Positions 7,254 to 35,473 of a stretch of 64,000 nt of DNA are shown one piece after another. Both the position numbers and the translations under genes were made by a program. Location: IMG/VR virus record IMGVR_UViG_3300030019_000003, positions 124,001 to 188,000 of that record, one strand, 5' to 3'. Numbering within the stretch: position 1 is the first letter of the stretch; each line of letters begins with the position of its first letter. The notes beneath the pieces are model-generated. The model saw nothing but the letters and a program-made list of their open reading frames with translations. It ran no database searches and was not told the origin of the DNA.

Positions 7254-7286
7254 TACTAACACAGACCTATTAGGTCTGTGTTAGTA
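7254..7286. terminator. inverted repeat terminator
   Basis: 16-bp arms, 1-nt spacer, just after gene stop. Confidence 0.7.
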
Positions 7287-7302
7287 TCTAGTTTCGTTTA
7301 AG

Positions 7303-7382
7303 AACATATTATTTAATTAATAACGAACAAGTACGTTAGTAATTGTGAGTTAAACTAATAACCTATAACTAGTTTACTAGTT
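7303..7382 (+). repeat. 80-bp promoter/leader repeat, copy 1
   Basis: 78/80 identical to 35350-35429; contains CATATTATT. Confidence 0.9.
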
Positions 7383-7432
7383 AAGTTACATTTATAAAAT
7401 TCAAGGAGATGTCTCATGTATAAGAAGCTAAC

Positions 7433-7897
7433 ATGCAAAAGAAACATATAAGAGGTACCACTATAAATAACATACTAATTGATAACACAATTAATATAAG
7501 CTATAGGCCTTACGATGTTTTGATGGCTAAGAAAGTAGAAAAACTACCAACAGAATATGTCGATAAAATACTAAACACCTATAACCAACTTTATGGTATA
7601 GGCGATCTTGAAAAAGTATTTTATTATAAACTAAGAAAAATGAAAGTTATCCATAAGGTAAGCTCTTCAGCTTTTCTTCCTGCTATGCTATTAGACCTTA
7701 ATTCTCCTAACGACATAATGGTCTATATCATGGTTTTATTAAATTACTACGATACTGAAAAACGACCAGCGTCAGTGTATGGTATTCTTAAGAATCTATT
7801 TCCTAACGGGTACTACTCACAAGTAACTAACCAGACTATCGTTGACACTATACGCCACACAGGCTATGCTAGATATGGTAAGATTTTTTTAATTTAA
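7433..7897 (+). CDS. hypothetical protein (154 aa)
   Basis: Intact ORF; start uncertain because the strong RBS precedes out-of-frame ATG 7416. Confidence 0.65.
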   Translation: MQKKHIRGTTINNILIDNTINISYRPYDVLMAKKVEKLPTEYVDKILNTYNQLYGIGDLEKVFYYKLRKMKVIHKVSSSAFLPAMLLDLNSPNDIMVYIMVLLNYYDTEKRPASVYGILKNLFPNGYYSQVTNQTIVDTIRHTGYARYGKIFLI

Positions 7898-7908
7898 AGG
7901 ATAATCCT

Positions 7909-8715
7909 ATGTTTACAAAATACGGTACTAATGTTACAGATTTCTTAAAGACGGCTAAAACCTTAAATGTCAATACTGACTTCATACACAAAATAGCTAA
8001 TTGTGATATAGAGGGTATTCCTCATTATGATGATGAGTTCTCTGCAGAAATTGTTTCAGAATGTTCTGAGAATCCATGGTACTATTTTAGAGAAGTAAAT
8101 AACTTTAATGTACCAACCTGTGAAGATGTTTTACATCTCGCACTTTTGATTAAGGGCTACGATACTCTTAGGTTAGGCAGAAGAGGTGTATTGAATACAA
8201 GTATACCAGCTTATATTCATTATGTGCTAAAATACACAGACATCATTAACAATATTGCTTTCGTAACTAACAATATGGATTTTGTTAAGAAACCGTTAGA
8301 GGTATTTCAAAATTTACAAGAAGCAGATATTCAAAATCATGTAACGATGTTAGAATGCCCTGGTTATGTTAGTAATGAATATACTGGTAGATGCTGCAGA
8401 ATAGGACAACTTGACTGGTTATTGGTAGGGGCTAAATACAGTATCGGTGTTGCCGATCTAACATTAGCTAATCCATTCACAGTTGCTACTATGCTTGAGA
8501 ATCTTATATCAGCTGTTAAAACTTCTGATGATAAAACACAATTTTCTAAAAGAGTTGTGCTCTATAAGGATATTGATCCGACAGAACACGATCTCTGCCT
8601 TAGTCAAGCATTAGATTCACTAGGTGGGTATTATGACAACATGGTTTTTGAACGTCATGATCTTTATAAGTTGTTAGAAAAAGAACCTACTGAAAAAATG
8701 CTATGCATTATTTAA
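7909..8715 (+). CDS. divergent paralog of the terminase large subunit N-terminal ATPase domain
   Basis: ECSENPWYYFREV versus ECSENPWYFFREV in the terminase; Walker A equivalent degenerate (LGRRGVLNTS versus QPRQTGKS). Confidence 0.7.
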   Translation: MFTKYGTNVTDFLKTAKTLNVNTDFIHKIANCDIEGIPHYDDEFSAEIVSECSENPWYYFREVNNFNVPTCEDVLHLALLIKGYDTLRLGRRGVLNTSIPAYIHYVLKYTDIINNIAFVTNNMDFVKKPLEVFQNLQEADIQNHVTMLECPGYVSNEYTGRCCRIGQLDWLLVGAKYSIGVADLTLANPFTVATMLENLISAVKTSDDKTQFSKRVVLYKDIDPTEHDLCLSQALDSLGGYYDNMVFERHDLYKLLEKEPTEKMLCII

Positions 8716-8750
8716 GTACTTATGAATTAAAATAAACAAAAGGTTAAAAA

Positions 8751-9140
8751 ATGAAGTTAGAATTAAAAGTTATGGGGGAGATTATAACATATGACTTGAA
8801 AACTCCCGAGGAAGCATGGGCGTGTCTTACCGGTATCGGTAAGACTGTAAAAGAACATCTTGGTAGATTCGCTATTGGTGAGTATACTTTAGGTAAAGTG
8901 TTTTTAAGGTTAGATATGAAGACACAGCACTATAACGGTGCTACGGAAAATGACAAGATTGCCGTTTGTAGCATCGAAGCTTTTAATATTACTTATAAAA
9001 CCAGTGAAGAATCAAAACCTTCTACGAAACGTTTTAGGGTAGGCGAAGTACAAACACTTGAATCTGTCATGGGTGCTTTCAAAGTTGCAGATCAATTTGC
9101 GAAAGATATTGATCGTAGTTTTAAACTACTTGTAGAGTAA
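8751..9140 (+). CDS. hypothetical protein (129 aa)
   Basis: AAAGGT RBS; intact ORF. Confidence 0.75.
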   Translation: MKLELKVMGEIITYDLKTPEEAWACLTGIGKTVKEHLGRFAIGEYTLGKVFLRLDMKTQHYNGATENDKIAVCSIEAFNITYKTSEESKPSTKRFRVGEVQTLESVMGAFKVADQFAKDIDRSFKLLVE

Positions 9141-9154
9141 AAAAGGATAATACG

Positions 9155-9562
9155 ATGGCCACTAAAAAAGTTACTGATGGCCTGATGCAGCTAATTAATG
9201 AATTAGAATCCAAAACACATCAGAAAAGTAAAACAGTAGGCGCGCTCATACTACCATCCGATACTAAGGTTTTAACAACAAGTGAGATAAAATCTATCGC
9301 TGAGCTAAAACCTGACAATGGCAATAAACCTAAGGTTCATTCTGAAATGGGGGCTATTGAAAAAATGGCCTTCGAGCAGTTTAGAAAAAACATGGAGGAT
9401 ATAGACGAGAAACAAAAGAGAGATACTTTTGTTCTTGAATATGTCTCAAAACAATATGTCTACCTTGATAGTGCGATTGATCTAGAGATTTACATAAAGA
9501 AACAAGTTGCAAATGGCATTGAAGTCTATAACGCAATTAGAAAAGAATTAGATGCTAATTAG
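9155..9562 (+). CDS. hypothetical protein (135 aa)
   Basis: AAAGGA RBS; intact ORF. Confidence 0.75.
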   Translation: MATKKVTDGLMQLINELESKTHQKSKTVGALILPSDTKVLTTSEIKSIAELKPDNGNKPKVHSEMGAIEKMAFEQFRKNMEDIDEKQKRDTFVLEYVSKQYVYLDSAIDLEIYIKKQVANGIEVYNAIRKELDAN

Positions 9563-9569
9563 AAAGTAA

Positions 9570-9603
9570 TAACAGAAGAGTAGCAACCGCTACTCTTCTG
9601 TTA
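9570..9603. terminator. bidirectional inverted repeat terminator
   Basis: 15-bp arms, 4-nt loop, T tract, between convergent genes. Confidence 0.75.
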
Positions 9604-9619
9604 CCTTATTTTTTTTTAT

Positions 9620-9633
9620 TCTGTTCACCGAAC
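9620..9633 (-). repeat. 14-nt post-stop motif GTTCGGTGAACAGA, copy 1
   Basis: Directly follows terminase TAA; exact copies at 43277-43290 (+) and 43620-43633 (-). Confidence 0.85.
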
Positions 9634-11019
9634 TTAAGCAGCTCTACGTTTATCTAATTCTATTTTTTCTAATAGAGTATCAATATTAAGAGTATCTAAA
9701 GAAGATGGGTCTAATATGTTATAAAGATACTGTATCTTATTTTTAGATTTAGCTACTAAACCAAGATGCTTAATAAGTTTCATTTCACTAGCAAGTCTTT
9801 CTATCTCTGTACGAATACGTATTTGATCTTCACGTTTACGTACTGCATCCATACCGCCAGCTTCTTCTACTTGGGTAGCTTTAACTGTTGTTAAGGTATT
9901 ATTAGGATTTAAACCATAGAATGATTTGTTAGAAGCCTCTGTCAAGAACCAGTATGGTAATAACCAAGCAACAACCATATCATCATGGCTATCAGAAGCA
10001 TGGTCTATTCTACCATTTTTAGATCGTAACCCTATAATCTGATTAATCAATCCGTTATCTCTTACAGTGTTACCTGTGTACTTAGTAGACGCCATAAAGG
10101 CTGCACCATAAAGTTTATCCCTTGCTTGTCTACCTGCCCCAGATGTTGCAAATCCAAACATGCTTCGATATTTGACATAGACGTTACTTTCTCTACGTAG
10201 CATACTAACATTAACAACTTCATTAAGATACTGTTTATTTACCATGCAGTCATTAACAACCCAGTTAAAGATACGTTTAAACGGATCAATAGTGTGCATT
10301 GGTAATATACGTAGTAAGTTATCAATGATCATAACACCACTAGATCTTCTTTCAGGAACTAGTATAGTATTATTGTATTTTATTAACAAGTCACCTATAA
10401 ACTCTGAGAATACGATAAGGTTAGTTTCATTATAGATACCTGTTGCGATAGTCTCACCTGATGATGCGTCTCTTATGATCATAGCAATATCATCTTTATT
10501 AACAGCATCAGAAGTATCTAGACCTACTATAAGTTTACGTGTTGGTAATCCAGCTTTAACTTCTTGTTCAGAAACATACCAGTTAGTGATATAACCACTT
10601 TTAGATAGTTCGGTATACTCAACTTTAGATTGTGATTTTTGAATATCCTCAATAACCTCTTTTGATAAAGGTGAAACATCTGAACCTTTAGCCCATAGGT
10701 TAAGGAAGTCTGCTCCGGCATTCTCACCTTTTGACATAGCCTCACTAATTTTCTCTTTTAACCACGCATCGGTATAACCTAATTGTCTATGGTTATATTC
10801 TAATAGTACTCTTAGTTCACCTGTAGGGCTATTTTTACATATAACAGATTTAAGAGCTTCAAGATCTTCAACATCAAAAAGTAACTCAGACCATCGCATA
10901 CTTTTAAGGTATAATTCTTCATAAGCAAACTTACCAGAATCAGTACTAATATACCCGGGGGTTGTTGTAAAAATATTGCCATAAGGAGCGTTAGCTGCTT
11001 TAGCAGAGTCTCTAGCCGC
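9634..11019 (-). CDS. terL: terminase large subunit, exon 2 (end of ATPase plus nuclease domain)
   Basis: Frame is open upstream of the called ORF: AARDSAKAANAPYGNIFTTTPG; GLDTSDAV and HDDMVVAW nuclease motifs. Confidence 0.9.
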   Translation of the reverse strand, partial: AARDSAKAANAPYGNIFTTTPGYISTDSGKFAYEELYLKSMRWSELLFDVEDLEALKSVICKNSPTGELRVLLEYNHRQLGYTDAWLKEKISEAMSKGENAGADFLNLWAKGSDVSPLSKEVIEDIQKSQSKVEYTELSKSGYITNWYVSEQEVKAGLPTRKLIVGLDTSDAVNKDDIAMIIRDASSGETIATGIYNETNLIVFSEFIGDLLIKYNNTILVPERRSSGVMIIDNLLRILPMHTIDPFKRIFNWVVNDCMVNKQYLNEVVNVSMLRRESNVYVKYRSMFGFATSGAGRQARDKLYGAAFMASTKYTGNTVRDNGLINQIIGLRSKNGRIDHASDSHDDMVVAWLLPYWFLTEASNKSFYGLNPNNTLTTVKATQVEEAGGMDAVRKREDQIRIRTEIERLASEMKLIKHLGLVAKSKNKIQYLYNILDPSSLDTLNIDTLLEKIELDKRRAA

Positions 11020-11458
11020 CTTGAATATTCAATGGGTTCGTTAGACCACATCCGCACCTCTATGTGCAGCTCACACTTTCATGTGACGATCAGGCTATCT
11101 CATCCTGAAAGGGCTTTCGCCGAATAGATCATATCTTTATCTTATATTTACTTAAGATAAACTTCGTTTCGATTTAAGGGATTTCATACCCGCCCACTTG
11201 GGCCCTACACCAATAACTGGTTGATCGTTGAGCACATCCCGTATATCACTTATGATACTTAGGGGCTTCGCTGCGTTGGTCGCCCAATCCTATTAAGTTT
11301 TTACTGTCCCGTTATGAATCATTACTCTAACGGTGTTATAGTATCTTTCGATCTATAAGTAGTATTAATAGGCTCTAAGGGGTTCTCCGCAATTAGAAGT
11401 TTTTGCTATATAGTGTCACCACTATATGGGGCACAGGCGGTTTTTAGGCCGCCATTTT
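11020..11458 (-). mobile_element. group I self-splicing intron (IA-like, 439 nt, no ORF) in terL
   Basis: 5' exon ends in U (GGU), intron ends in G; P element AAUUGCGGAGAACCC (11380-11394), Q-like CAACGCAGC, R GUGCUCAACGAUCA (11221-11235), S AAGAUAUGAUCU (11126-11137); removal restores frame MLPAQG|AARDSAK. Confidence 0.88.
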
Positions 11459-12199
11459 ACCCTGGGCTGGAAGCATAGCTGGGATGGTTATGTCGGCATA
11501 ATTAATATAAGCAATCTCATCTACTTGGTTCGTTGGGAATGTCATACCACGTCCAACATTATAAGCTGATTTAGGATTGTTCTGCGCCACTGATGTTATG
11601 TATTGTGTATTATTAGAATTAACCGTTATCTTCTCAGTGTTATTCGTATCTGTTTTAGATCTCAACTGTAGCATAGCTGGGAGCTCACTCATGATGTCTT
11701 TGATACGTTTAACGTTGTTGACTCGCAGAGTATCATCTTTGGTCAGCAAGTTGATGCTAGAGCGTACAGACCCTACTGAAAGTAACCACACCATAAGAAT
11801 ATCTGTTGATACTGATTTACCAGTTTGTCGAGGTTGTATTAGTAATGTAGTCACATGATTAAAATATAACCAGTATAATGAAATGTTACCACGATTAGCT
11901 CTTAACACAACACCTTTTTCAACACCTTGTGCTGGAACTCTAACTACTTCTCTAAAGAAGTACCAAGGATTCTCAGAACACTCATCTACTATAAGAATAA
12001 TCTCTTCAACTGAAAGATCATCTGAATGGGGGTCAACCCCTTGAAGAGCTGGATTATGTAATGCTAAACAAAAGGCACAGTTCTTTATACCCATCTTGTG
12101 CATTTTGACAGCATACATTTTAAAAGAGTCATTAGTTGTCTTTAAGTCGGCTATGGCTCCAGGATGTTTATTAACCCAGTCGTTTAAATATAATATCAT
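11459..12199 (-). CDS. terL: terminase large subunit, exon 1 (ATPase N-terminus)
   Basis: GGAGGA RBS before ATG 12199; ENPWYFFRE, Walker A PRQTGKS, Walker B QVDEIAY; spliced product 708 aa. Confidence 0.9.
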
Positions 12200-12285
12200 T
12201 ATTAATCCTCCCGACACTATATTTTTTTATATAAGTCATATAATTTTTTAATAGACGTATTTTGCCTGAGTGTAAGGAGAAAGAC

Positions 12286-13416
12286 ATGGCTAAAGAACTG
12301 TTTAATTATATAGCGATTGGCGACATACATTTTGGTCACACTAATACAACAACAGAACATATTATAGAAAGTTTTAACCAATGGTTTAAAACCTATATGA
12401 GCACAATACTAAAAACAAATGCTATCTTTTTAGAAGGAGATGTGTTTGATAAGCTATTAGGCAATAGTAGTACTGATTATATACTTGCTATGGAATGGCT
12501 ATATAACTTAGCCATATTTTGTTCTAAACATAAAATAAAGTTAAGAATATTAAGAGGTACTTTATCTCATGATTGGAATCAACTTAGACTAGTAGAAAAG
12601 ACATTTTTAAAACTTAAAACTGAACTTGATTTTAAATATATTCAAACTTTACATATAGAGCATATGTCTGATTTTAATATTGATGTACTGTATGTTCCTG
12701 ATGAGTATAAACATGACGCATCTGATACTTTTAAAGATGTTCAAGCCTTGCTGGTTGAAAAAGGTTTAACCAGTGTTGATATTGCTATTATGCATGGTAA
12801 CTTTAGTTATCAGTTACCTATTAAGACTGTCACTGCTCATGATGAAAATAGCTATCTTAACATTGTTAAGTATTATATTACTATTAATCATATTCATACT
12901 TCTAGTATTTTCGATAGAATCATAGCACCAGGTAGTTTTGATAGATTAGCTCATGGTGAAGAAGAAGATAAAGGTTGTGTTCACATTACATTATTTAAAG
13001 ACGGTAGTAAACGTTTTAGTTTTTTAAAAAATACCTTAAGTAAAATCTATAAAACAATTAACTGTTTTGATCTTTCACTCGATGATATCTTTAGTAAGAT
13101 AGATAAGGGAGTTAGAAAGTTACCTTTGAATTCTTTTATAAGGCTTAAGATAAATTCAGATACAAGACTTAGTAAGAACGTAGAAGACTTTACTAAAAAG
13201 TATGAGTTTTATACTTTTAAAATTGAATCTGAAAAAGATAAGGGCTTAACGAATGGTAGTAATATTACTGATATAGAAATACCGTTAGAAAGTTTTCATA
13301 TTACCCCTGAGAATATAGAAGAATTACTACTAGAGGAGTTACGTAAACAAACATTATCAGAAATTGAACTTGATACGGCAATAGAGGAGTTAAGGCGAGC
13401 TATTGAAAAACTTTAA
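12286..13416 (+). CDS. sbcD: SbcD/Mre11-like metallophosphoesterase nuclease
   Basis: GDIHFG, GDVFD, GTLSHD, MHG, NHIH, PGS motifs; AAGGAG RBS favours ATG 12286. Confidence 0.88.
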   Translation: MAKELFNYIAIGDIHFGHTNTTTEHIIESFNQWFKTYMSTILKTNAIFLEGDVFDKLLGNSSTDYILAMEWLYNLAIFCSKHKIKLRILRGTLSHDWNQLRLVEKTFLKLKTELDFKYIQTLHIEHMSDFNIDVLYVPDEYKHDASDTFKDVQALLVEKGLTSVDIAIMHGNFSYQLPIKTVTAHDENSYLNIVKYYITINHIHTSSIFDRIIAPGSFDRLAHGEEEDKGCVHITLFKDGSKRFSFLKNTLSKIYKTINCFDLSLDDIFSKIDKGVRKLPLNSFIRLKINSDTRLSKNVEDFTKKYEFYTFKIESEKDKGLTNGSNITDIEIPLESFHITPENIEELLLEELRKQTLSEIELDTAIEELRRAIEKL

Positions 13417-21314: not shown

Positions 21315-23579
21315 ATGACCGATGGAGTAACATCATCAGGTATACCTTATAATACACTCTTTGAAGATTTTCCAAGAGTTTTAGAAGTGGATCCTGATTT
21401 AGAGGTTAGGGAGGAGTTACTAAGCTTCCATGCTATGAATGGTAGTGTTGCTGAAAACTCATCAAGTCGTATGTTTATGTACTCTGCGCATGTTGCCCAG
21501 ATGCTAGCTATTATACATGGCGAAACGTCTATATGGCAATCCGGATTAGAGTCGCAATTCTCTAAAAATACTTTCTCGTGTAAAGCTAAAAATGATTGTA
21601 CCGTTCTAAGAGTTGTTTCGCGTTATAATGGTAATAGCAGCGATTATGCCAAGGGTCTTACAGAAGTAGTAGTCTTTGTTGTTGATAATGAAACAGGTGA
21701 GATAGATTTCATTAAGGTACCCTATTACCATACGTTACATCAGTATTTTGGTTTTAAATACATGTGGAATAAGGGTATCGTTAATGATCTTACAAAAGGG
21801 CTAAGACTTAAAAAAGGTACGGTGCTAGCTGACTCACCAACAGTCGGACCTAACGATACGTATAACTATGGTGTTAATGCTAACATAGCCCTTATGAGGC
21901 TACCAGAGACCGCAGAGGATGGTGTTATCATATCAGAGTCACTTTCTAATAAGTTAGTTTATAAGATCTTTGAAAGAAGAGTTATCAATTGTGGCGCAGA
22001 AAAGATTCCTCTTAATATCTATGGTGATGAAAATGAGTATAAAGCATTTCCAGAGATAGGTCAAAAGGTTAATACAGATAGTGTACTTATGGCGGTTCGC
22101 ACCTATGATGAAGCATTAGCTCCAGCATTATTTACCAAGAAAGCATTGATGGAATATGATCCACAATTCGATGAACCTTTCTATGTAAAAGGTCCTGGAA
22201 AAGATGAAGTTATTAACGGATTTGAGGTAACCTCAGGAACTGTGGTCGATGTAATTTCCTATTTTAACCCTAAATTCAAGAAGAGTATGTTCACAGGTGT
22301 AGCAGATGATGCTACAAAATATATTAATGGTTATAAGAAATACCATGAAGATATTATTGGTGCCTATGAGGATATTAAGAAAGAATACAGATCAGTCTAC
22401 GGTGATAATAATCTTAAACTTTCTGAAAGATTACACCGACAGATTATTAACAGTTATGCTATTGCAAATCCGGATGGTAACAAGATAGGATACTGTTTTA
22501 GAAAAGACAATCTTGATATTATACGTATTGAAATTGTAGTCGAATATACCGTCAGAGCAAAGGTGGGTTCAAAAATTTCTGATATGGCTGGATCCAAAGG
22601 TGTTATAGTACAAGTTAAACCAGACCATGAGATGCCAGTGGACATCTATGGTGAAAAAGCCCAAATTTTAATGGACCCGAGTGCTGTGGTTTCACGTATG
22701 AATATGGGAAGACTATATGGTGTCTATTTTAATGCCTCATCAAGGCACACCAAGTCATTAATTACTAACTGGTTGTATGCAGAAAAAACAAATTTCCCTA
22801 CTAGTAATTTAGACGCAATTCCTATTACTAAAGATATCGTTCTTAAACCTTTAAATCAGTATTCGGATGCTGTAATAAATACTGCATTTGATATTGCTGT
22901 AGGATTTACTGCTGTGTTTGGTACAGAACAATTTGAAGGTTATAGGGCGATAACAGATAGAGCCTCTAAAGAAAATATTCTTAAAGATATTGTTACTAAA
23001 GAGTTATTTTTCTATTACAGAGCTGGTAGCAAACGTAAACGTTATCAGGTTGCGTATGGTATTGAAAGTGCTATTTATAAACCTATACGCGATAGAGTTA
23101 AGTTTATTATGTATGGTAAAGAGTATATTAGTAAAAAACCTATAAGAATAGCACCACAGTATACTATCTTGTTAGGTAAAACTGCTGATAACTTCTTATC
23201 TACAGCATCTGCTAAGACTAATCACTTTGGTCTAGGTGTTGGTATCCCTAGTCATCAGAGACATCGTAATCCGTTTAAAGATACGGCAGTTAAAAATGAA
23301 TCTGAAACTGAAGGACGCTTGTTCGTATCTTTTGCGCCACCACAGTTTGTTGCTGAAATAAACGATAGAGCTAATAAAGATATCAACCGTTATATCTACG
23401 GTAAACTATTAAGAACTCCTAAGCCTACTAATGTAGGGCAGCTTATTGATAGGTCTGTTATACCTTATGGTAATAATTCAGCATTACAAGTAATAGAGTC
23501 GGTATTTAACTGTGCCGGAGTTGGTATTTCTTATGTAAGAGACAGCGCTGTTATACATGAGAATAAAGAAGGTGTATAA
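21315..23579 (+). CDS. non-virion RNA polymerase beta subunit, C-terminal part (phiKZ gp71-73-like), uninterrupted
   Basis: GVNANIA, EDGVIISES, GSKISDMAGSKGVI, DPSAVVSRMNMGRLY beta motifs. Confidence 0.9.
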   Translation: MTDGVTSSGIPYNTLFEDFPRVLEVDPDLEVREELLSFHAMNGSVAENSSSRMFMYSAHVAQMLAIIHGETSIWQSGLESQFSKNTFSCKAKNDCTVLRVVSRYNGNSSDYAKGLTEVVVFVVDNETGEIDFIKVPYYHTLHQYFGFKYMWNKGIVNDLTKGLRLKKGTVLADSPTVGPNDTYNYGVNANIALMRLPETAEDGVIISESLSNKLVYKIFERRVINCGAEKIPLNIYGDENEYKAFPEIGQKVNTDSVLMAVRTYDEALAPALFTKKALMEYDPQFDEPFYVKGPGKDEVINGFEVTSGTVVDVISYFNPKFKKSMFTGVADDATKYINGYKKYHEDIIGAYEDIKKEYRSVYGDNNLKLSERLHRQIINSYAIANPDGNKIGYCFRKDNLDIIRIEIVVEYTVRAKVGSKISDMAGSKGVIVQVKPDHEMPVDIYGEKAQILMDPSAVVSRMNMGRLYGVYFNASSRHTKSLITNWLYAEKTNFPTSNLDAIPITKDIVLKPLNQYSDAVINTAFDIAVGFTAVFGTEQFEGYRAITDRASKENILKDIVTKELFFYYRAGSKRKRYQVAYGIESAIYKPIRDRVKFIMYGKEYISKKPIRIAPQYTILLGKTADNFLSTASAKTNHFGLGVGIPSHQRHRNPFKDTAVKNESETEGRLFVSFAPPQFVAEINDRANKDINRYIYGKLLRTPKPTNVGQLIDRSVIPYGNNSALQVIESVFNCAGVGISYVRDSAVIHENKEGV

Positions 23580-23616: not shown

Positions 23617-24204
23617 ATGAATTTAACACGACGAATATCCTATGGCGAGATACTCGAATGTATCCAGTCTTCAAAATATAAAGAGTCTTGTGATATTACC
23701 ATAGACAAAATCCCAGAGAGTTTTTTAGACTTAACAGGACGTACACATAATAATCATTTGTATCTACGTTATCTTGGTGTTAACAGTAACTATTATCCTC
23801 TATGGCTTATAGAGTGTCAGCGTTGCTTTAAACTCTCTATTATAGTGTATGTTGACGATCGTGTAACAGAGACAGGTAAGTGTAGTAAGTGTCGTTCTAG
23901 TAAGTTCTATAATTCTACAGATAAGTTTTATAAAATCTGGAATCAGCTCTATCGTAAAGTTACTGATCCTAAACATAGGTTTTATGCTAATTCGGGTGGA
24001 AATGGTTATACCATAGATCCTAGTTGGAGTGACTATCTTGTTTTTAAAAAAGATATGTTTAAAAGTTATAGCAAAGGACTAGTACTAACTGTTATAGGTA
24101 GGTCTAAGCATTTTTCTAAGAAGACAGCAAAATGGACAGAACCTGTTTATAACATTAATGCTAAGAATGCTAAAGAAATTAGAGGGAGGGGTACTAAAGT
24201 ATGA
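23617..24204 (+). CDS. degenerate HNH-like homing endonuclease
   Basis: Two CxxC pairs; YANSGGNGYTIDPSWSDYLVFKKDM resembles YGGRGI.VC..W..F..F..DM; the LDRID..Y...NCRW core is replaced by LTVIGRSKHFSKKTAKW. Confidence 0.6.
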   Translation: MNLTRRISYGEILECIQSSKYKESCDITIDKIPESFLDLTGRTHNNHLYLRYLGVNSNYYPLWLIECQRCFKLSIIVYVDDRVTETGKCSKCRSSKFYNSTDKFYKIWNQLYRKVTDPKHRFYANSGGNGYTIDPSWSDYLVFKKDMFKSYSKGLVLTVIGRSKHFSKKTAKWTEPVYNINAKNAKEIRGRGTKV

Positions 24205-33623: not shown

Positions 33624-35348
33624 GTGAACGATATACTGGCTAGAATTATATCTACTACGGCGCCTAAGTTTAATACCAACATAACAGATGGTACTGCAGG
33701 TGAGATACTTAAGGGTATACCTGATTTTCTAGATGATCTTTTTAGAAGAACCATCGCAGATATTGGTGTGACGATACCACTTTCGTATAAAGGGTATAGA
33801 AGATTAACTCCTAAAGAAGAGTTTACACGATCTTTATTAAATAACAGTAATAAGACTATCTTGGATCTTGCAGAGTCTGATTTCTATATGATTGAATTTC
33901 TGTTTGAATACGATGGAAGAGTTATCGTTAAACCGCTATATTTACCTTTTGCTGGCGATGGTAATATTATGCGTATTAGCAATACTCCATACATTGTTGT
34001 TCCCGTATTATCCGATACCGTTATTTCTCCTTCCTATAATGAGATATTTGTCAGGTTGCTGATTGACAAGTTTAATATCATAGGACAACTTAGAACCTTT
34101 ATTATTAATGGTGAGAAAGTACCAGGTCAAGTAGTTTACAGTAAGATTATGAAAGGAACACCTGTTGGTGATAAGATAGGAAAACCCGTTACACCTGTTT
34201 CACTTTATCTATTAGGTAAATATGGTTTTGCTAAGGTACTTAGAAAATACTGTAATATTACTGATTTCATAGTTACTAATGAAAATGTCGATCATCTTCG
34301 TGAAACACATAATGTGTATGAGTCAACAGGATTAAAACCTATTAACCTTATCACACCAGGTTATGCACCTCATGATATTAAGATTTGTATACCTATGAAG
34401 TATGAGCCTACAACATTCTTAAATAACTTCATCTTTGGAATCTTGTATGTCTTTGATATACTTCCTAAAACAGCAGATGAATTCCTCTATCTTCTTAACG
34501 GTCGTGAGATTGATGGTAGGGTATACCCCCCTAATGTTAAGGATGAAATATATATCCATTGGAGAACTATCCTGGGTAGATTATCCTATCGCGACATGTT
34601 CTCTATTATGAGAATCACAACAGATGTTAAAGACCACTTCAACTCTTTAGATACCTATCTTGATAACTTTAATAAAATAAAGTTACAGAACAATGGTATC
34701 ATGGTAAATGATTTTTACGATATGCTACATTATATCATGTTGAACTTTGATACATTGTTACTAACAAGTAAAGAATACAGCAGTGATATTCAAAATAGGT
34801 ATATTGATATCACTTACTATATGACGAACGATATCATCATCGCATTTAACAAGTTGATACAAATGATCAAGCGCAGATCATCTCGTAAATCTATCGTATC
34901 TGAAAAAGAGATTCTTAAGATCTTTAAAGATGAATTAAAGAGTAAAATTATTTATGGTCTTATTAGCAGCAAGCAAGGACTTAATATTAGTATATCACCT
35001 GCTGATTATGTGGGCGATATTAAGTACATGAAGTGTACTTCCTTATTGCAAGATCAAAACAGAGGTAATGGAGTAAGAGTTAACAGCAACAACTCCTTCC
35101 CAGAAAATACAAGAACTCTAAGAGGTCCAGATCTCTATCTTGGATCAGTTTATTTCTTACGAAAGTCTTGTCCATCTCCTCGATTTGAATTTAATCTTTA
35201 TTTAGATTATGACATCCATACTGGTAAGATTAACATGCCAGAAGATATTAAAAGAGCTGTGGATAAGCTTGATAAATTATTATCAGGTAAAGTTGTCAAT
35301 GATAACATACCACTTCTTGAATCGGATGAAGTTATCGGAGAAGATTAA
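33624..35348 (+). CDS. non-virion RNA polymerase beta subunit, N-terminal part (phiKZ gp123-like)
   Basis: 574 aa; KPLYLPF, VPVLSDTVIS, TSLLQDQNRGNG, PSPRFEFN motifs; synteny. Confidence 0.8.
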   Translation: MNDILARIISTTAPKFNTNITDGTAGEILKGIPDFLDDLFRRTIADIGVTIPLSYKGYRRLTPKEEFTRSLLNNSNKTILDLAESDFYMIEFLFEYDGRVIVKPLYLPFAGDGNIMRISNTPYIVVPVLSDTVISPSYNEIFVRLLIDKFNIIGQLRTFIINGEKVPGQVVYSKIMKGTPVGDKIGKPVTPVSLYLLGKYGFAKVLRKYCNITDFIVTNENVDHLRETHNVYESTGLKPINLITPGYAPHDIKICIPMKYEPTTFLNNFIFGILYVFDILPKTADEFLYLLNGREIDGRVYPPNVKDEIYIHWRTILGRLSYRDMFSIMRITTDVKDHFNSLDTYLDNFNKIKLQNNGIMVNDFYDMLHYIMLNFDTLLLTSKEYSSDIQNRYIDITYYMTNDIIIAFNKLIQMIKRRSSRKSIVSEKEILKIFKDELKSKIIYGLISSKQGLNISISPADYVGDIKYMKCTSLLQDQNRGNGVRVNSNNSFPENTRTLRGPDLYLGSVYFLRKSCPSPRFEFNLYLDYDIHTGKINMPEDIKRAVDKLDKLLSGKVVNDNIPLLESDEVIGED

Positions 35349-35349
35349 A

Positions 35350-35429
35350 AACATATTATTTAATTAATAACGAACAAGTACGTTAGTAATTGTGAGTTAA
35401 ACTAGCAACCTATAACTAGTTTACTAGTT
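35350..35429 (+). repeat. 80-bp promoter/leader repeat, copy 2
   Basis: 78/80 identical to 7303-7382. Confidence 0.9.
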
Positions 35430-35473
35430 GCTGGTTAACTATAAAAATAAATAAAAACCCAAAGGAAGTAAAC

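What the first reader, a model, noticed from the sequence alone, without database searches (positions are those of the whole stretch)
7909..8715. Catalytically degenerate paralog of the terminase ATPase domain
Seen: the first ~110 aa align by eye with terminase exon 1 (ECSENPWYYFREV versus ECSENPWYFFREV, 8059-8097), but Walker A QPRQTGKS is replaced by LGRRGVLNTS and no nuclease domain follows. It sits 0.9 kb from terL on the opposite strand in an apparently early operon. Known: Avs (STAND NTPase) defence systems detect phage large terminase ATPase domains. Inference: a decoy or inhibitor of terminase-sensing immunity, or a regulator of the packaging motor.
Basis: partly seen in the sequence, partly recalled or inferred. 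Interest (0 to 1): 0.75.

Follow-up and report, generated by a model that had tools for sequence, protein, structure and literature searches.

The report
Terminase-derived orphan gene in jumbo phage
A peat-metagenome jumbo phage carries a real 268-codon gene that began as a copy of the front end of its own DNA-packaging enzyme (large terminase); it keeps one short conserved module and no recognisable enzyme motif, so it is a non-catalytic spin-off whose role, possibly in controlling packaging, is still unproven.

Summary
ORF268 (window 7909-8715, +) is a genuine coding gene. It has a genome-typical ribosome-binding site and normal codon usage, and it sits inside a four-gene operon. Its resemblance to the phage's own TerL is real (BLASTP E 2e-10; hhalign probability 96.7%) but narrower than claimed. 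It is firm for aa 7-64, weak up to aa 94 (the P-loop position), and undetectable for aa 95-268. It has no Walker A lysine, no Walker B/catalytic glutamate, no coupling motif and no nuclease domain.

The protein is an orphan: only identical copies turned up in 5.8 and 1.84 billion-protein searches, and relatives with TerL 42-58% identical lack it near terL. The retained roughly 50-aa TerL N-terminal module recurs outside TerL:
- Alone, in Erwinia phage Kwan gp157 and its homologues.
- In ATPase-only TerL paralogues, including a much better one ("par360") 9.7 kb upstream in this same genome.

The operon follows a promoter motif resembling the AR9 virion-RNA-polymerase early consensus.

Best reading: a non-catalytic TerL N-module protein that probably binds whatever that module binds. 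No evidence bears on the Avs-decoy idea. Both structure predictions failed (pLDDT 37 and 46), so a hidden degenerate ATPase fold is neither shown nor excluded.

The parts
7254..7286 (.). Perfect 15-bp-stem hairpin just after the upstream 1114-aa gene. It is a likely terminator or boundary of the preceding transcription unit.
   Evidence: scan_promoters_terminators; sequence read.
7296..7323 (+). Promoter-like motif TTTAAGAACATATTATTTAATTAATAAC. It belongs to the genome-wide class TAAnnA[T/C]ATATTATT, which resembles the AR9 vRNAP early consensus. A repeated leader element follows it, up to about 7400.
   Evidence: Motif enrichment and site lists. The ACATATTAT variant occurs 8 times in intergenic sequence and 4 times in coding sequence. 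AR9 consensus AAATATATATTAT from PMC5312081. Leader alignment.
7433..7897 (+). orf154, the first gene of the operon. It is an orphan.
   Evidence: absent near terL of relatives.
7896..7901 (+). Ribosome-binding site AAAGGA of ORF268. The context AAAGGATAATCCTATG matches the AAGGAnnATCCTATG context seen at other genes of this genome.
   Evidence: Sequence compared with the gene starts listed.
7909..8715 (+). ORF268, the finding: a TerL-derived, non-catalytic orphan protein.
7927..8100 (+). aa 7-64: the TerL N-terminal module. It is firmly homologous to TerL aa ~26-91 and includes the near-identical motif at 8059-8097.
   Evidence: BLASTP E 2e-10; HMMER 28.9 bits; hhalign; module alignment A6.
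8101..8202 (+). aa 65-98: a weak extension of the alignment up to the P-loop position. LGRRGVLNTS (aa 89-98) stands where TerL has QPRQTGKS, with no P-loop lysine.
   Evidence: hhalign alignment to aa 94 with low per-column confidence.
8203..8712 (+). aa 99-268: the C-terminal two-thirds, with no detectable similarity to TerL or to anything else. Codon usage is as coding-like as in the N-terminal part.
   Evidence: sequence tests; codon score 0.225 per codon in both halves; weak Atlas leads only.
8751..9140 (+). orf129b, an operon member and an orphan.
9155..9562 (+). orf135, the last operon gene and an orphan.
9568..9605 (.). Bidirectional intrinsic terminator shared by the operon and the convergent terL.
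9634..11019 (-). terL exon 2: the end of the ATPase domain plus the nuclease domain. The coding frame extends upstream of the first ATG, to about 11019.
   Evidence: alignment to unsplit TerLs.
11020..11458 (-). Group I intron in terL, about 439 nt, without an ORF. The 5' exon ends in U and the intron ends in G. Boundaries are inferred from protein alignment, give or take a few nt.
   Evidence: RF00028 52.2 bits, E 1.6e-12; fold z-score -3.4. The intron is present in DNA contigs of other runs.
11459..12199 (-). terL exon 1: the source of the duplicated module, plus Walker A and Walker B. The real start is the ATG at 12199 (MILY...).

Best explanation
Shown:
- ORF268 is a real, lineage-restricted protein-coding gene.
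- It arose by partial duplication of the 5' part of this phage's own terL.
- It firmly retains only the pre-Walker-A N-terminal module (aa 7-64, weakly to aa 94). That includes the residues invariant in the TerLs and TerL-derived proteins aligned here (I, E, N, Y), plus W and R.
- It has no recognisable P-loop, Walker B/catalytic glutamate, coupling motif or nuclease domain, so it should neither hydrolyse ATP as TerL does nor cut DNA.
- It lies in a four-gene orphan operon bounded by a hairpin and a bidirectional terminator, behind a promoter motif of the class that marks virion-RNA-polymerase early promoters in the related phage AR9.

Inferred:
- The ~50-aa module is an autonomous binding unit. 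The same module is conserved, without any ATPase, in an unrelated protein family of Erwinia phages.
- ORF268 uses it to bind the partner that the TerL N-terminus binds. That partner is unknown. Candidates are a small-terminase-like factor, the portal or docking machinery, or TerL itself.
- It would then act as a non-catalytic competitor or adaptor that modulates packaging, made from a transcription unit separate from terL and probably earlier.
For: Real gene:
- The RBS context matches other genes.
- Codon score is 0.225 per codon against 0.29 +/- 0.09 for the genome's genes, equal in both halves, with all other frames negative.
- The gene is packed tightly in its operon.

TerL origin:
- BLASTP E 2e-10; PHROG terL hits; HMMER 28.9 bits; hhalign probability 96.7%.
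- It is closer to its own TerL (46%, sharing the lineage-specific C-S-E) than to par360 (33%) or to relatives' TerLs (30-40%).

Loss of catalysis:
- The alignment ends at a P-loop position without a lysine.
- Nothing beyond it is detected by any sequence test.

Orphan status.

The module is portable and under selection:
- Kwan gp157 aa 305-353 match TerL profile positions 42-90 only (probability 97.1%, E 6.5e-11).
- The module is the best-conserved block among the three Wellingtonvirus homologues.
- ORF268 and that family share nothing else.
- ATPase-only paralogues also keep the module.

Early-type promoter: read against PMC5312081.
Against: - There is no direct evidence for any binding partner or any effect on packaging.
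- No transcript data: no RNA run was listed.
- No population variation is available to measure selection. Copies are identical in IMG/VR and in four other peat runs.
- The promoter class is assigned by analogy with AR9 only.
- Within the 12-codon motif, 9 of 10 synonymous choices match terL (4.95 expected, P about 0.007, a post hoc test). A recent patch transfer could therefore explain the motif's conservation, rather than long-term selection.
- Both structure predictions were too poor to show whether the module folds on its own.
Confidence: 0.45

Rival explanations
1. Pseudo-ATPase. The whole of ORF268 is a very diverged but structurally intact copy of the TerL ATPase (RecA-like) domain with dead catalytic motifs. 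It would co-assemble with, or cap, the TerL ring as a regulatory subunit.
For: - hhalign continues collinearly to the P-loop position.
- With a profile of the three ATPase-only paralogues, the summed alignment posteriors over the full length (115.6) exceeded 119 of 120 versions with a shuffled C-terminus. Moderate confidence fell at a motif-III-like strand.
- MAFFT places GQLDW opposite the Walker B NQVDE.
- ESM Atlas neighbours with named families are all P-loop or Rossmann-like. They include Terminase_6N (TM 0.49 over 194 residues) and Podovirus_Gp16.
Against: - The hhalign score itself does not rise when the C-terminus is included.
- The same shuffle test with the larger TerL profile is negative: 81 of 120 shuffles did as well or better.
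- hmmsearch --max and global hhalign find nothing.
- Atlas feature scores are below 0.8, a level shuffled proteins reach a third of the time. The Atlas model has pLDDT 0.35 and the AF2 model pLDDT 36.8.
- Kwan gp157 shows that the module can exist without any ATPase.
Confidence: 0.2
2. A young orphan with no packaging-related role. A partial terL duplication was captured in an accessory operon. The N-terminal motif looks conserved only because it is recent, or was patched from terL. Either the protein does something unrelated or it is nearly neutral.
For: - It is strictly lineage-specific, along with all three operon neighbours.
- The motif shows excess synonymous identity to terL (9 of 10 codons, P about 0.007), while the flanks are at random-level nucleotide identity.
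- There is no population variation with which to demonstrate selection.
Against: - A 268-codon open frame in a 34% GC genome, with normal codon usage in both halves and a canonical RBS, is not decaying sequence.
- The residues kept are those invariant across the 21 aligned module sequences.
- The same module has been retained independently in other accessory proteins.
- A 36-nt conversion patch without flanking homology would be unusual (inference).
Confidence: 0.2
3. Immune decoy or inhibitor. ORF268 mimics TerL to occupy or block terminase-sensing Avs (STAND) receptors early in infection.
For: - It is TerL-derived and probably expressed from an early-type promoter.
- A jumbo-phage TerL can weakly activate Avs5 (bioRxiv 10.1101/2025.07.08.663546), so terminase sensing is relevant to such phages.
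Against: - Nothing here tests binding.
- ORF268 retains no detectable ATPase or nuclease fold. From published work as I recall it (not verified here), those are what Avs1-3 sensors recognise.
- The literature searches found no TerL-derived decoy.
- The host and its defence repertoire are unknown, because the phage comes from peat metagenomes.
Confidence: 0.05

Closest known systems
Large terminase of phiKZ-like/msRNAP jumbo phages (phiKZ gp25; PHROG 2 and 32359), with T4 gp17 as the solved reference (PDB 3EZK, 2O0H)
   Same: The N-terminal pre-Walker-A segment is homologous. ORF268 aa 7-64(-94) correspond to TerL aa ~26-91(-131), with the NPWYFFREV motif nearly identical to this phage's own TerL.
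   Different: ORF268 has no P-loop lysine, no Walker B or catalytic Glu, no coupling motif and no nuclease domain. It is 268 aa against roughly 700-750 aa. It is on the opposite strand, in another operon, behind a different promoter type. The T4 gp17 sequence match to the TerL profile begins only at Walker A, so the shared module lies in a part with no solved homologue.
ATPase-only TerL paralogues found here: par360 of this genome (G000 121161-122243), P0003 (Logan contigs L026/L027), and Vibrio phage Yong XC31 QAX96283. None carries a functional annotation in the sources seen here.
   Same: All are stand-alone TerL derivatives without a nuclease domain. They sit among small genes of unknown function, keep the N-terminal module, and have lost the catalytic glutamate.
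   Different: They align with the entire ATPase domain (par360: 36% identity over 247 aa, E 1e-43) and keep the RQxGK P-loop lysine. ORF268 does neither, and it is closer to TerL itself than to them.
Erwinia phage Kwan gp157, Wellington gp156 and pEa_SNUABM_11 QXO09584 (annotated 'putative terminase large subunit' or 'hypothetical protein')
   Same: These are accessory proteins that contain only the ~50-aa TerL N-terminal module and no ATPase motifs. The module is their best-conserved block.
   Different: The module sits near their C-terminus (aa 305-353 of 419), not at the N-terminus. The rest of the protein is unrelated to ORF268. They are independent inventions and not orthologues.
Packaging-interference proteins of phage satellites, such as SaPI Ppi, which binds a helper-phage terminase subunit (from my own knowledge, not tested here)
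   Same: The working principle proposed here: a small non-catalytic protein that acts on packaging by binding a component of the terminase system.
   Different: There is no sequence relationship. Those proteins are encoded by satellites against a helper phage, whereas ORF268 is encoded by the phage itself and is derived from its own TerL. The interaction is hypothetical for ORF268.

Membership tests
Large terminase (TerL), phiKZ-like type | Homologous N-terminal pre-Walker-A segment | tested here: met
   BLASTP E 2e-10; HMMER 28.9 bits for aa 7-64; hhalign probability 96.7% for aa 7-94.
Large terminase (TerL), phiKZ-like type | Walker A P-loop (RQxGK[ST]) with the catalytic lysine | tested here: not met
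   The aligned position reads LGRRGVLNTS. There is no GK[ST] anywhere in the 268 aa (sequence).
Large terminase (TerL), phiKZ-like type | Walker B hhhhDE with the catalytic glutamate, and the TTT coupling motif | tested here: not met
   No significant alignment exists beyond aa 94. The only collinear candidate, GQLDW, has Trp where Glu should be (MAFFT), and that placement has no statistical support.
Large terminase (TerL), phiKZ-like type | C-terminal RNase-H-like nuclease domain | tested here: not met
   The ORF ends at aa 268. The downstream ORFs have no similarity to TerL exon 2.
RecA-like/ASCE ATPase fold (as a pseudo-enzyme) | Three-layer alpha/beta core spanning aa ~85-260 | tested here: inconclusive
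   AF2 pLDDT 36.8. The Atlas model has pLDDT 0.35, and its P-loop-like neighbours are below significance. The shuffle test is positive with one profile and negative with the other.
ATPase-only TerL paralogues (par360 type) | Full-length alignment to the TerL ATPase domain with the P-loop lysine retained | tested here: not met
   ORF268 against par360 aligns only aa 22-63, E 4e-5.
Module-only TerL-N proteins (Kwan gp157 type) | TerL N-terminal ~50-aa module present without ATPase motifs | tested here: met
Module-only TerL-N proteins (Kwan gp157 type) | Homology outside the module (common descent of the whole protein) | tested here: not met
   hhalign of ORF268 against the Kwan-family alignment matches only aa 29-66.
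Anti-Avs decoy or inhibitor | Binds an Avs sensor domain, or blocks its activation by TerL | not testable with these tools
   No multimer prediction or assay is available. The host is unknown.
   52.2 bits against a gathering score of 50, E 1.6e-12; boundaries.

The most novel reading that the evidence does not exclude
The ~50-aa N-terminal segment of TerL in phiKZ-like jumbo phages is an autonomous docking module for a still-unidentified packaging partner. That partner could be a small-terminase-like factor, which as far as I know has not been identified in these phages, or the capsid-docking machinery at the phage nucleus. On this reading, these phages repeatedly spin off non-catalytic proteins carrying the module (ORF268, the Kwan gp157 family, par360-type dead ATPases) to time, regulate or sabotage packaging, for instance against co-infecting relatives.
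Probability: 0.15. Interest if true: 0.75.

Novelty: new variant of a known kind. Interest (0 to 1): 0.45.

Why it matters
A recent review lists how capsids dock on the phage nucleus for genome packaging as an open question (PMC12908238). As far as I know, which proteins besides TerL take part is also unsettled. ORF268 alone is an orphan of unknown role. Taken with Kwan gp157 and the ATPase-only paralogues, it marks a short, highly conserved TerL N-terminal segment as a separable module that evolution keeps re-using. That gives a concrete handle for finding what the TerL N-terminus binds: a 50-aa bait with four invariant residues in the alignment made here. It also flags a set of unannotated or mis-annotated 'terminase-like' genes that are not terminases.

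Tried and rejected
- Structure of ORF268. AF2 from the single sequence gave pLDDT 36.8 and was unusable. No fold search was run on it because the matches would be meaningless.
- Structure of a relative's TerL ATPase domain from a 9-sequence alignment. This gave pLDDT 46.2 and was also too poor.
- Homologue searches. Only identical copies were found, so no alignment could be built and no dN/dS measured.
- Population variation. Contigs from four other peat runs were identical over window 7300-12300.
- Expression. No RNA run was listed.
- Pfam. No hit for ORF268 or its operon neighbours.
- PDB profile search with the module alignment. Only chance-level hits.
- C-terminal homology. hmmsearch --max, global hhalign and BLOSUM45 BLASTP were all negative. 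The shuffle test gave conflicting results with the two profiles.
- First Rfam pass over 6 kb at E <= 0.1. It missed the intron. A search of the 481-nt piece then found it.
- Homing-endonuclease relic. Rejected for ORF268 because it has no HNH, GIY-YIG or LAGLIDADG match.
- Frameshifted terL pseudogene. Rejected because a six-frame search of the genome finds only the in-frame N-terminal match.
- Second nuclease half. The 425-aa ORF after par360 is not one. It is a BCS1-like AAA+ protein.

Full report
**Setting**

The window is bases 124001-188000 of a 252,159-bp virus record with direct terminal repeats and 34% GC. The phage was seen only in peat metagenomes. Its TerL is of the phiKZ-like/msRNAP jumbo-phage type. 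The best cultured match over the first 100 aa is Xanthomonas phage RTH11 at 59%. IMG/VR relatives are 42-58% identical. An RNA polymerase beta-subunit gene lies in the window.

**The observation**

ORF268 (7909-8715, +) exists as described.
- Its motif ECSENPWYYFREV differs at one residue from TerL's ECSENPWYFFREV.
- BLASTP against TerL exon 1 aligns aa 22-63 with aa 46-91 at 46% identity, E 2e-10.
- PHROG terminase profiles match aa 5-74.
- An HMM built here from 17 TerLs plus par360 matches aa 7-64 at 28.9 bits.
- hhalign against a TerL profile aligns aa 7-94 with probability 96.7%. It stops where TerL has its P-loop and puts LGRRGV opposite QPRQTG.

Its last 30 residues carry little confidence, and nothing supports an alignment to aa 110. 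The protein has no GK[ST] anywhere. No nuclease domain follows. The terL stop is 919 nt away on the other strand.

**terL is split by a group I intron**

The roughly 40 aa of TerL that fall between the two listed terL ORFs are encoded in frame directly upstream of the first ATG of the second ORF. The intervening sequence is about 439 nt (window 11020-11458, minus strand). It matches the group I intron model above its gathering score (52.2 bits, E 1.6e-12). The 5' exon ends in U and the intron ends in G. Contigs from other runs contain the intron as DNA.

**Is ORF268 a gene?**

Yes.
- Its start has the AAGGA-N-ATCCT-ATG context seen at other genes.
- Its codon-usage score is 0.225 per codon, against 0.29 +/- 0.09 for the genome's genes. 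The score is identical for aa 1-94 and aa 95-268, and every other frame is strongly negative.
- It sits 11 nt after orf154 and 35 nt before orf129b.

**How far does the TerL homology go?**

Residues 95-268 give nothing with hmmsearch at maximum sensitivity, global hhalign or BLOSUM45 BLASTP against all collected TerLs and paralogues.

I then forced a long collinear hhalign alignment and compared the real protein with 120 versions whose C-terminus was shuffled.
- The alignment score did not change with either profile.
- With a three-sequence paralogue profile, the summed posteriors were higher than in 119 of 120 shuffles.
- With the larger TerL profile they were not: 81 of 120 shuffles did as well or better.

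The ESM Atlas holds the sequence with a poor model (pLDDT 0.35). Its nearest named neighbours are all P-loop or Rossmann-like, including Terminase_6N at TM 0.49. The scores are in the range that shuffled proteins reach. AF2 without an alignment failed, with pLDDT 36.8.

A hidden, very degenerate ATPase core is therefore neither shown nor excluded. What is shown is a TerL N-terminal segment followed by about 170 residues of unrecognisable sequence.

**Origin**

ORF268 is closer to its own TerL (46%, sharing the lineage-specific C-S-E before NPWY) than to par360 (33%) or to relatives' TerLs (30-40%). It is therefore a duplication within this lineage.

It is an orphan.
- Only identical copies exist among 5.8 billion clustered proteins, 1.84 billion representatives and IMG/VR.
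- Ten relatives carry no ORF268, orf154, orf129b or orf135 near terL. The flanks searched reach up to 10 kb, and several of those contigs are shorter.

One oddity stands out. Inside the 12-codon motif, 9 of 10 synonymous choices equal those of terL (4.95 expected from genome codon usage, P about 0.007, a post hoc test). The flanking aligned codons are at random-level nucleotide identity. This could mean a recent patch transfer. I have left it unexplained.

**Other TerL derivatives found on the way**

1. The same genome encodes a much better ATPase-domain paralogue, par360, at genome 121161-122243. That is 2.8 kb upstream of the window start and 9.7 kb upstream of ORF268.
   - It is 360 aa and 36% identical to TerL exon 1 over 247 aa, E 1e-43.
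   - It aligns over its full length with the ATPase domain of cultured jumbo-phage TerLs.
   - It keeps the P-loop lysine (GPRQVGKL), has R-D in place of the Walker B D-E, and has no nuclease domain.
   - A BCS1-like AAA+ gene follows it.
2. Similar stand-alone paralogues keep the lysine and have lost the glutamate (D-N).
   - One is P0003, on two Logan contigs. Those contigs also carry a homologue of the window's 182-aa ORF.
   - Another is in Vibrio phage Yong XC31, QAX96283, annotated 'hypothetical protein'.
3. Erwinia phage Kwan gp157 (419 aa) contains only the ~50-aa segment, at aa 305-353. It matches TerL profile positions 42-90 with probability 97.1%, E 6.5e-11.
   - It has homologues in Wellington and pEa_SNUABM_11, and the module is their best-conserved block.
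   - It shares nothing else with ORF268.

In an alignment of 21 module sequences, I, E, N and Y of the IxxExxxNxxY core are invariant, ORF268 included. Of 317 phage records with a TerL N-terminal match, 9 have a second place. No solved structure covers the module: the T4 gp17 sequence match to the TerL profile begins at Walker A, and a PDB profile search with the module found only chance hits.

**Expression context**

An unsupervised k-mer search of intergenic regions found a motif, TAAnnATATATTAT. Of the 20 seed sites, 19 are on the + strand, and many lie 35-60 nt upstream of a gene start.

The variant ACATATTAT, which precedes orf154 at window 7304, occurs 8 times in intergenic sequence and 4 times in coding sequence, although only about 10% of the genome is intergenic. 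It also has the same extended flanks.

The motif closely resembles the experimentally defined early (virion RNA polymerase) consensus of phage AR9, AAATATATATTAT. The same paper states that vRNAP promoters of phiKZ-related phages are extended, AT-rich and highly conserved (PMC5312081).

The operon is bounded by a hairpin at 7254-7286 and a bidirectional terminator at 9568-9605. No RNA run was listed.

**Interpretation**

The solid part is anatomical. ORF268 is a TerL-derived, non-catalytic, lineage-specific protein that keeps the TerL N-terminal module.

The mechanistic part is inference. That module is conserved on its own in an unrelated protein family and in dead ATPase paralogues, so it most likely carries a function of its own. 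The simplest such function is binding a partner of the TerL N-terminus. ORF268 would then act as a competitor or adaptor in packaging, expressed separately from terL.

I give the whole statement 0.45. The rivals are:
- a full but dead ATPase fold (0.2);
- a young orphan with no packaging role (0.2);
- the Avs-decoy idea (0.05), for which there is no evidence here and no precedent in the literature searches.

**Novelty and score**

TerL is well known. Stand-alone, non-catalytic TerL N-terminal derivatives in jumbo phages were not described in any paper I retrieved, and the examples seen in records are annotated as hypothetical or, misleadingly, as terminase. I rate this a new variant of a known kind, with interest 0.45. 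It is a useful lead for finding the partner of the TerL N-terminus, and the specific finding remains an orphan with an untested role.

Noticed in passing
Outside the window: G000:C1:121161-122243 (+) = L003:1372-2454, followed by 122261-123538 (+): par360 is a 360-aa ATPase-domain-only paralogue of TerL (36% identity over 247 aa). It keeps the P-loop lysine, has R-D in place of the Walker B D-E, and has no nuclease domain. The next gene is a 425-aa BCS1-like AAA+ ATPase. Similar stand-alone paralogues exist on Logan contigs (P0003, L026/L027) and in Vibrio phage Yong XC31 (QAX96283).
   Followed up: partly
window 11020-11458 (-): terL is interrupted by an ORF-less group I intron of about 439 nt (RF00028, 52.2 bits; GC 42% against 34% for the genome). 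Relatives L018 and L024 appear to carry insertions at other terL positions, while most relatives are unsplit.
   Followed up: partly
L034:1158-2417 (Erwinia phage Kwan gp157), L035:301-1476 (Wellington gp156), L036:512-1807 (pEa_SNUABM_11): A conserved accessory protein family contains only the ~50-aa TerL N-terminal module, near its C-terminus, and no ATPase motifs. Two of the members are annotated 'putative terminase large subunit', which they are not.
   Followed up: partly
window 7296-7400 and 35337-35470; also genome 97610-97750, 107425-107520, 223030-223120: A repeated intergenic cassette: the promoter-like motif followed by shuffled modules (TAATAACGAACAAGTACGTTAGTAATTGTGAGTTAAAC and TAATAACCTATAACTAGTTTACTAGTT, both containing palindromes). 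Five copies precede different genes, which suggests a duplicated or mobile promoter-leader unit.
   Followed up: partly
whole genome; in the window e.g. 2011, 13420, 15714, 21097, 32336, 35351, 43344: About 28 intergenic sites share TAAnnA[T/C]ATATTATT, and nearly all are on the + strand. The motif resembles the AR9 early vRNAP promoter consensus. One site precedes the RNA polymerase beta-subunit gene at window 21315-23579.
   Followed up: partly
window 8062-8097 versus 11927-11962 (-): Within the shared 12-codon motif, 9 of 10 synonymous codon choices match between ORF268 and terL, including the minor codons GAG and TAC (P about 0.007, post hoc). The flanking aligned codons are at random-level nucleotide identity. 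This hints at a recent patch transfer or nucleotide-level constraint and remains unexplained.
   Followed up: partly
window 23617-24204 (+): A 195-aa HNH endonuclease-like ORF (PHROG 374, E 9e-14) lies immediately after the RNA polymerase beta-subunit gene. It may be a free-standing homing endonuclease.
   Followed up: no
window 8254-8352 (ORF268 aa 116-148): HMMER reports a second, non-significant match (-2.5 bits) of this stretch to the very N-terminal part of the TerL profile (positions 16-44). This could be a faint internal repeat or chance.
   Followed up: no
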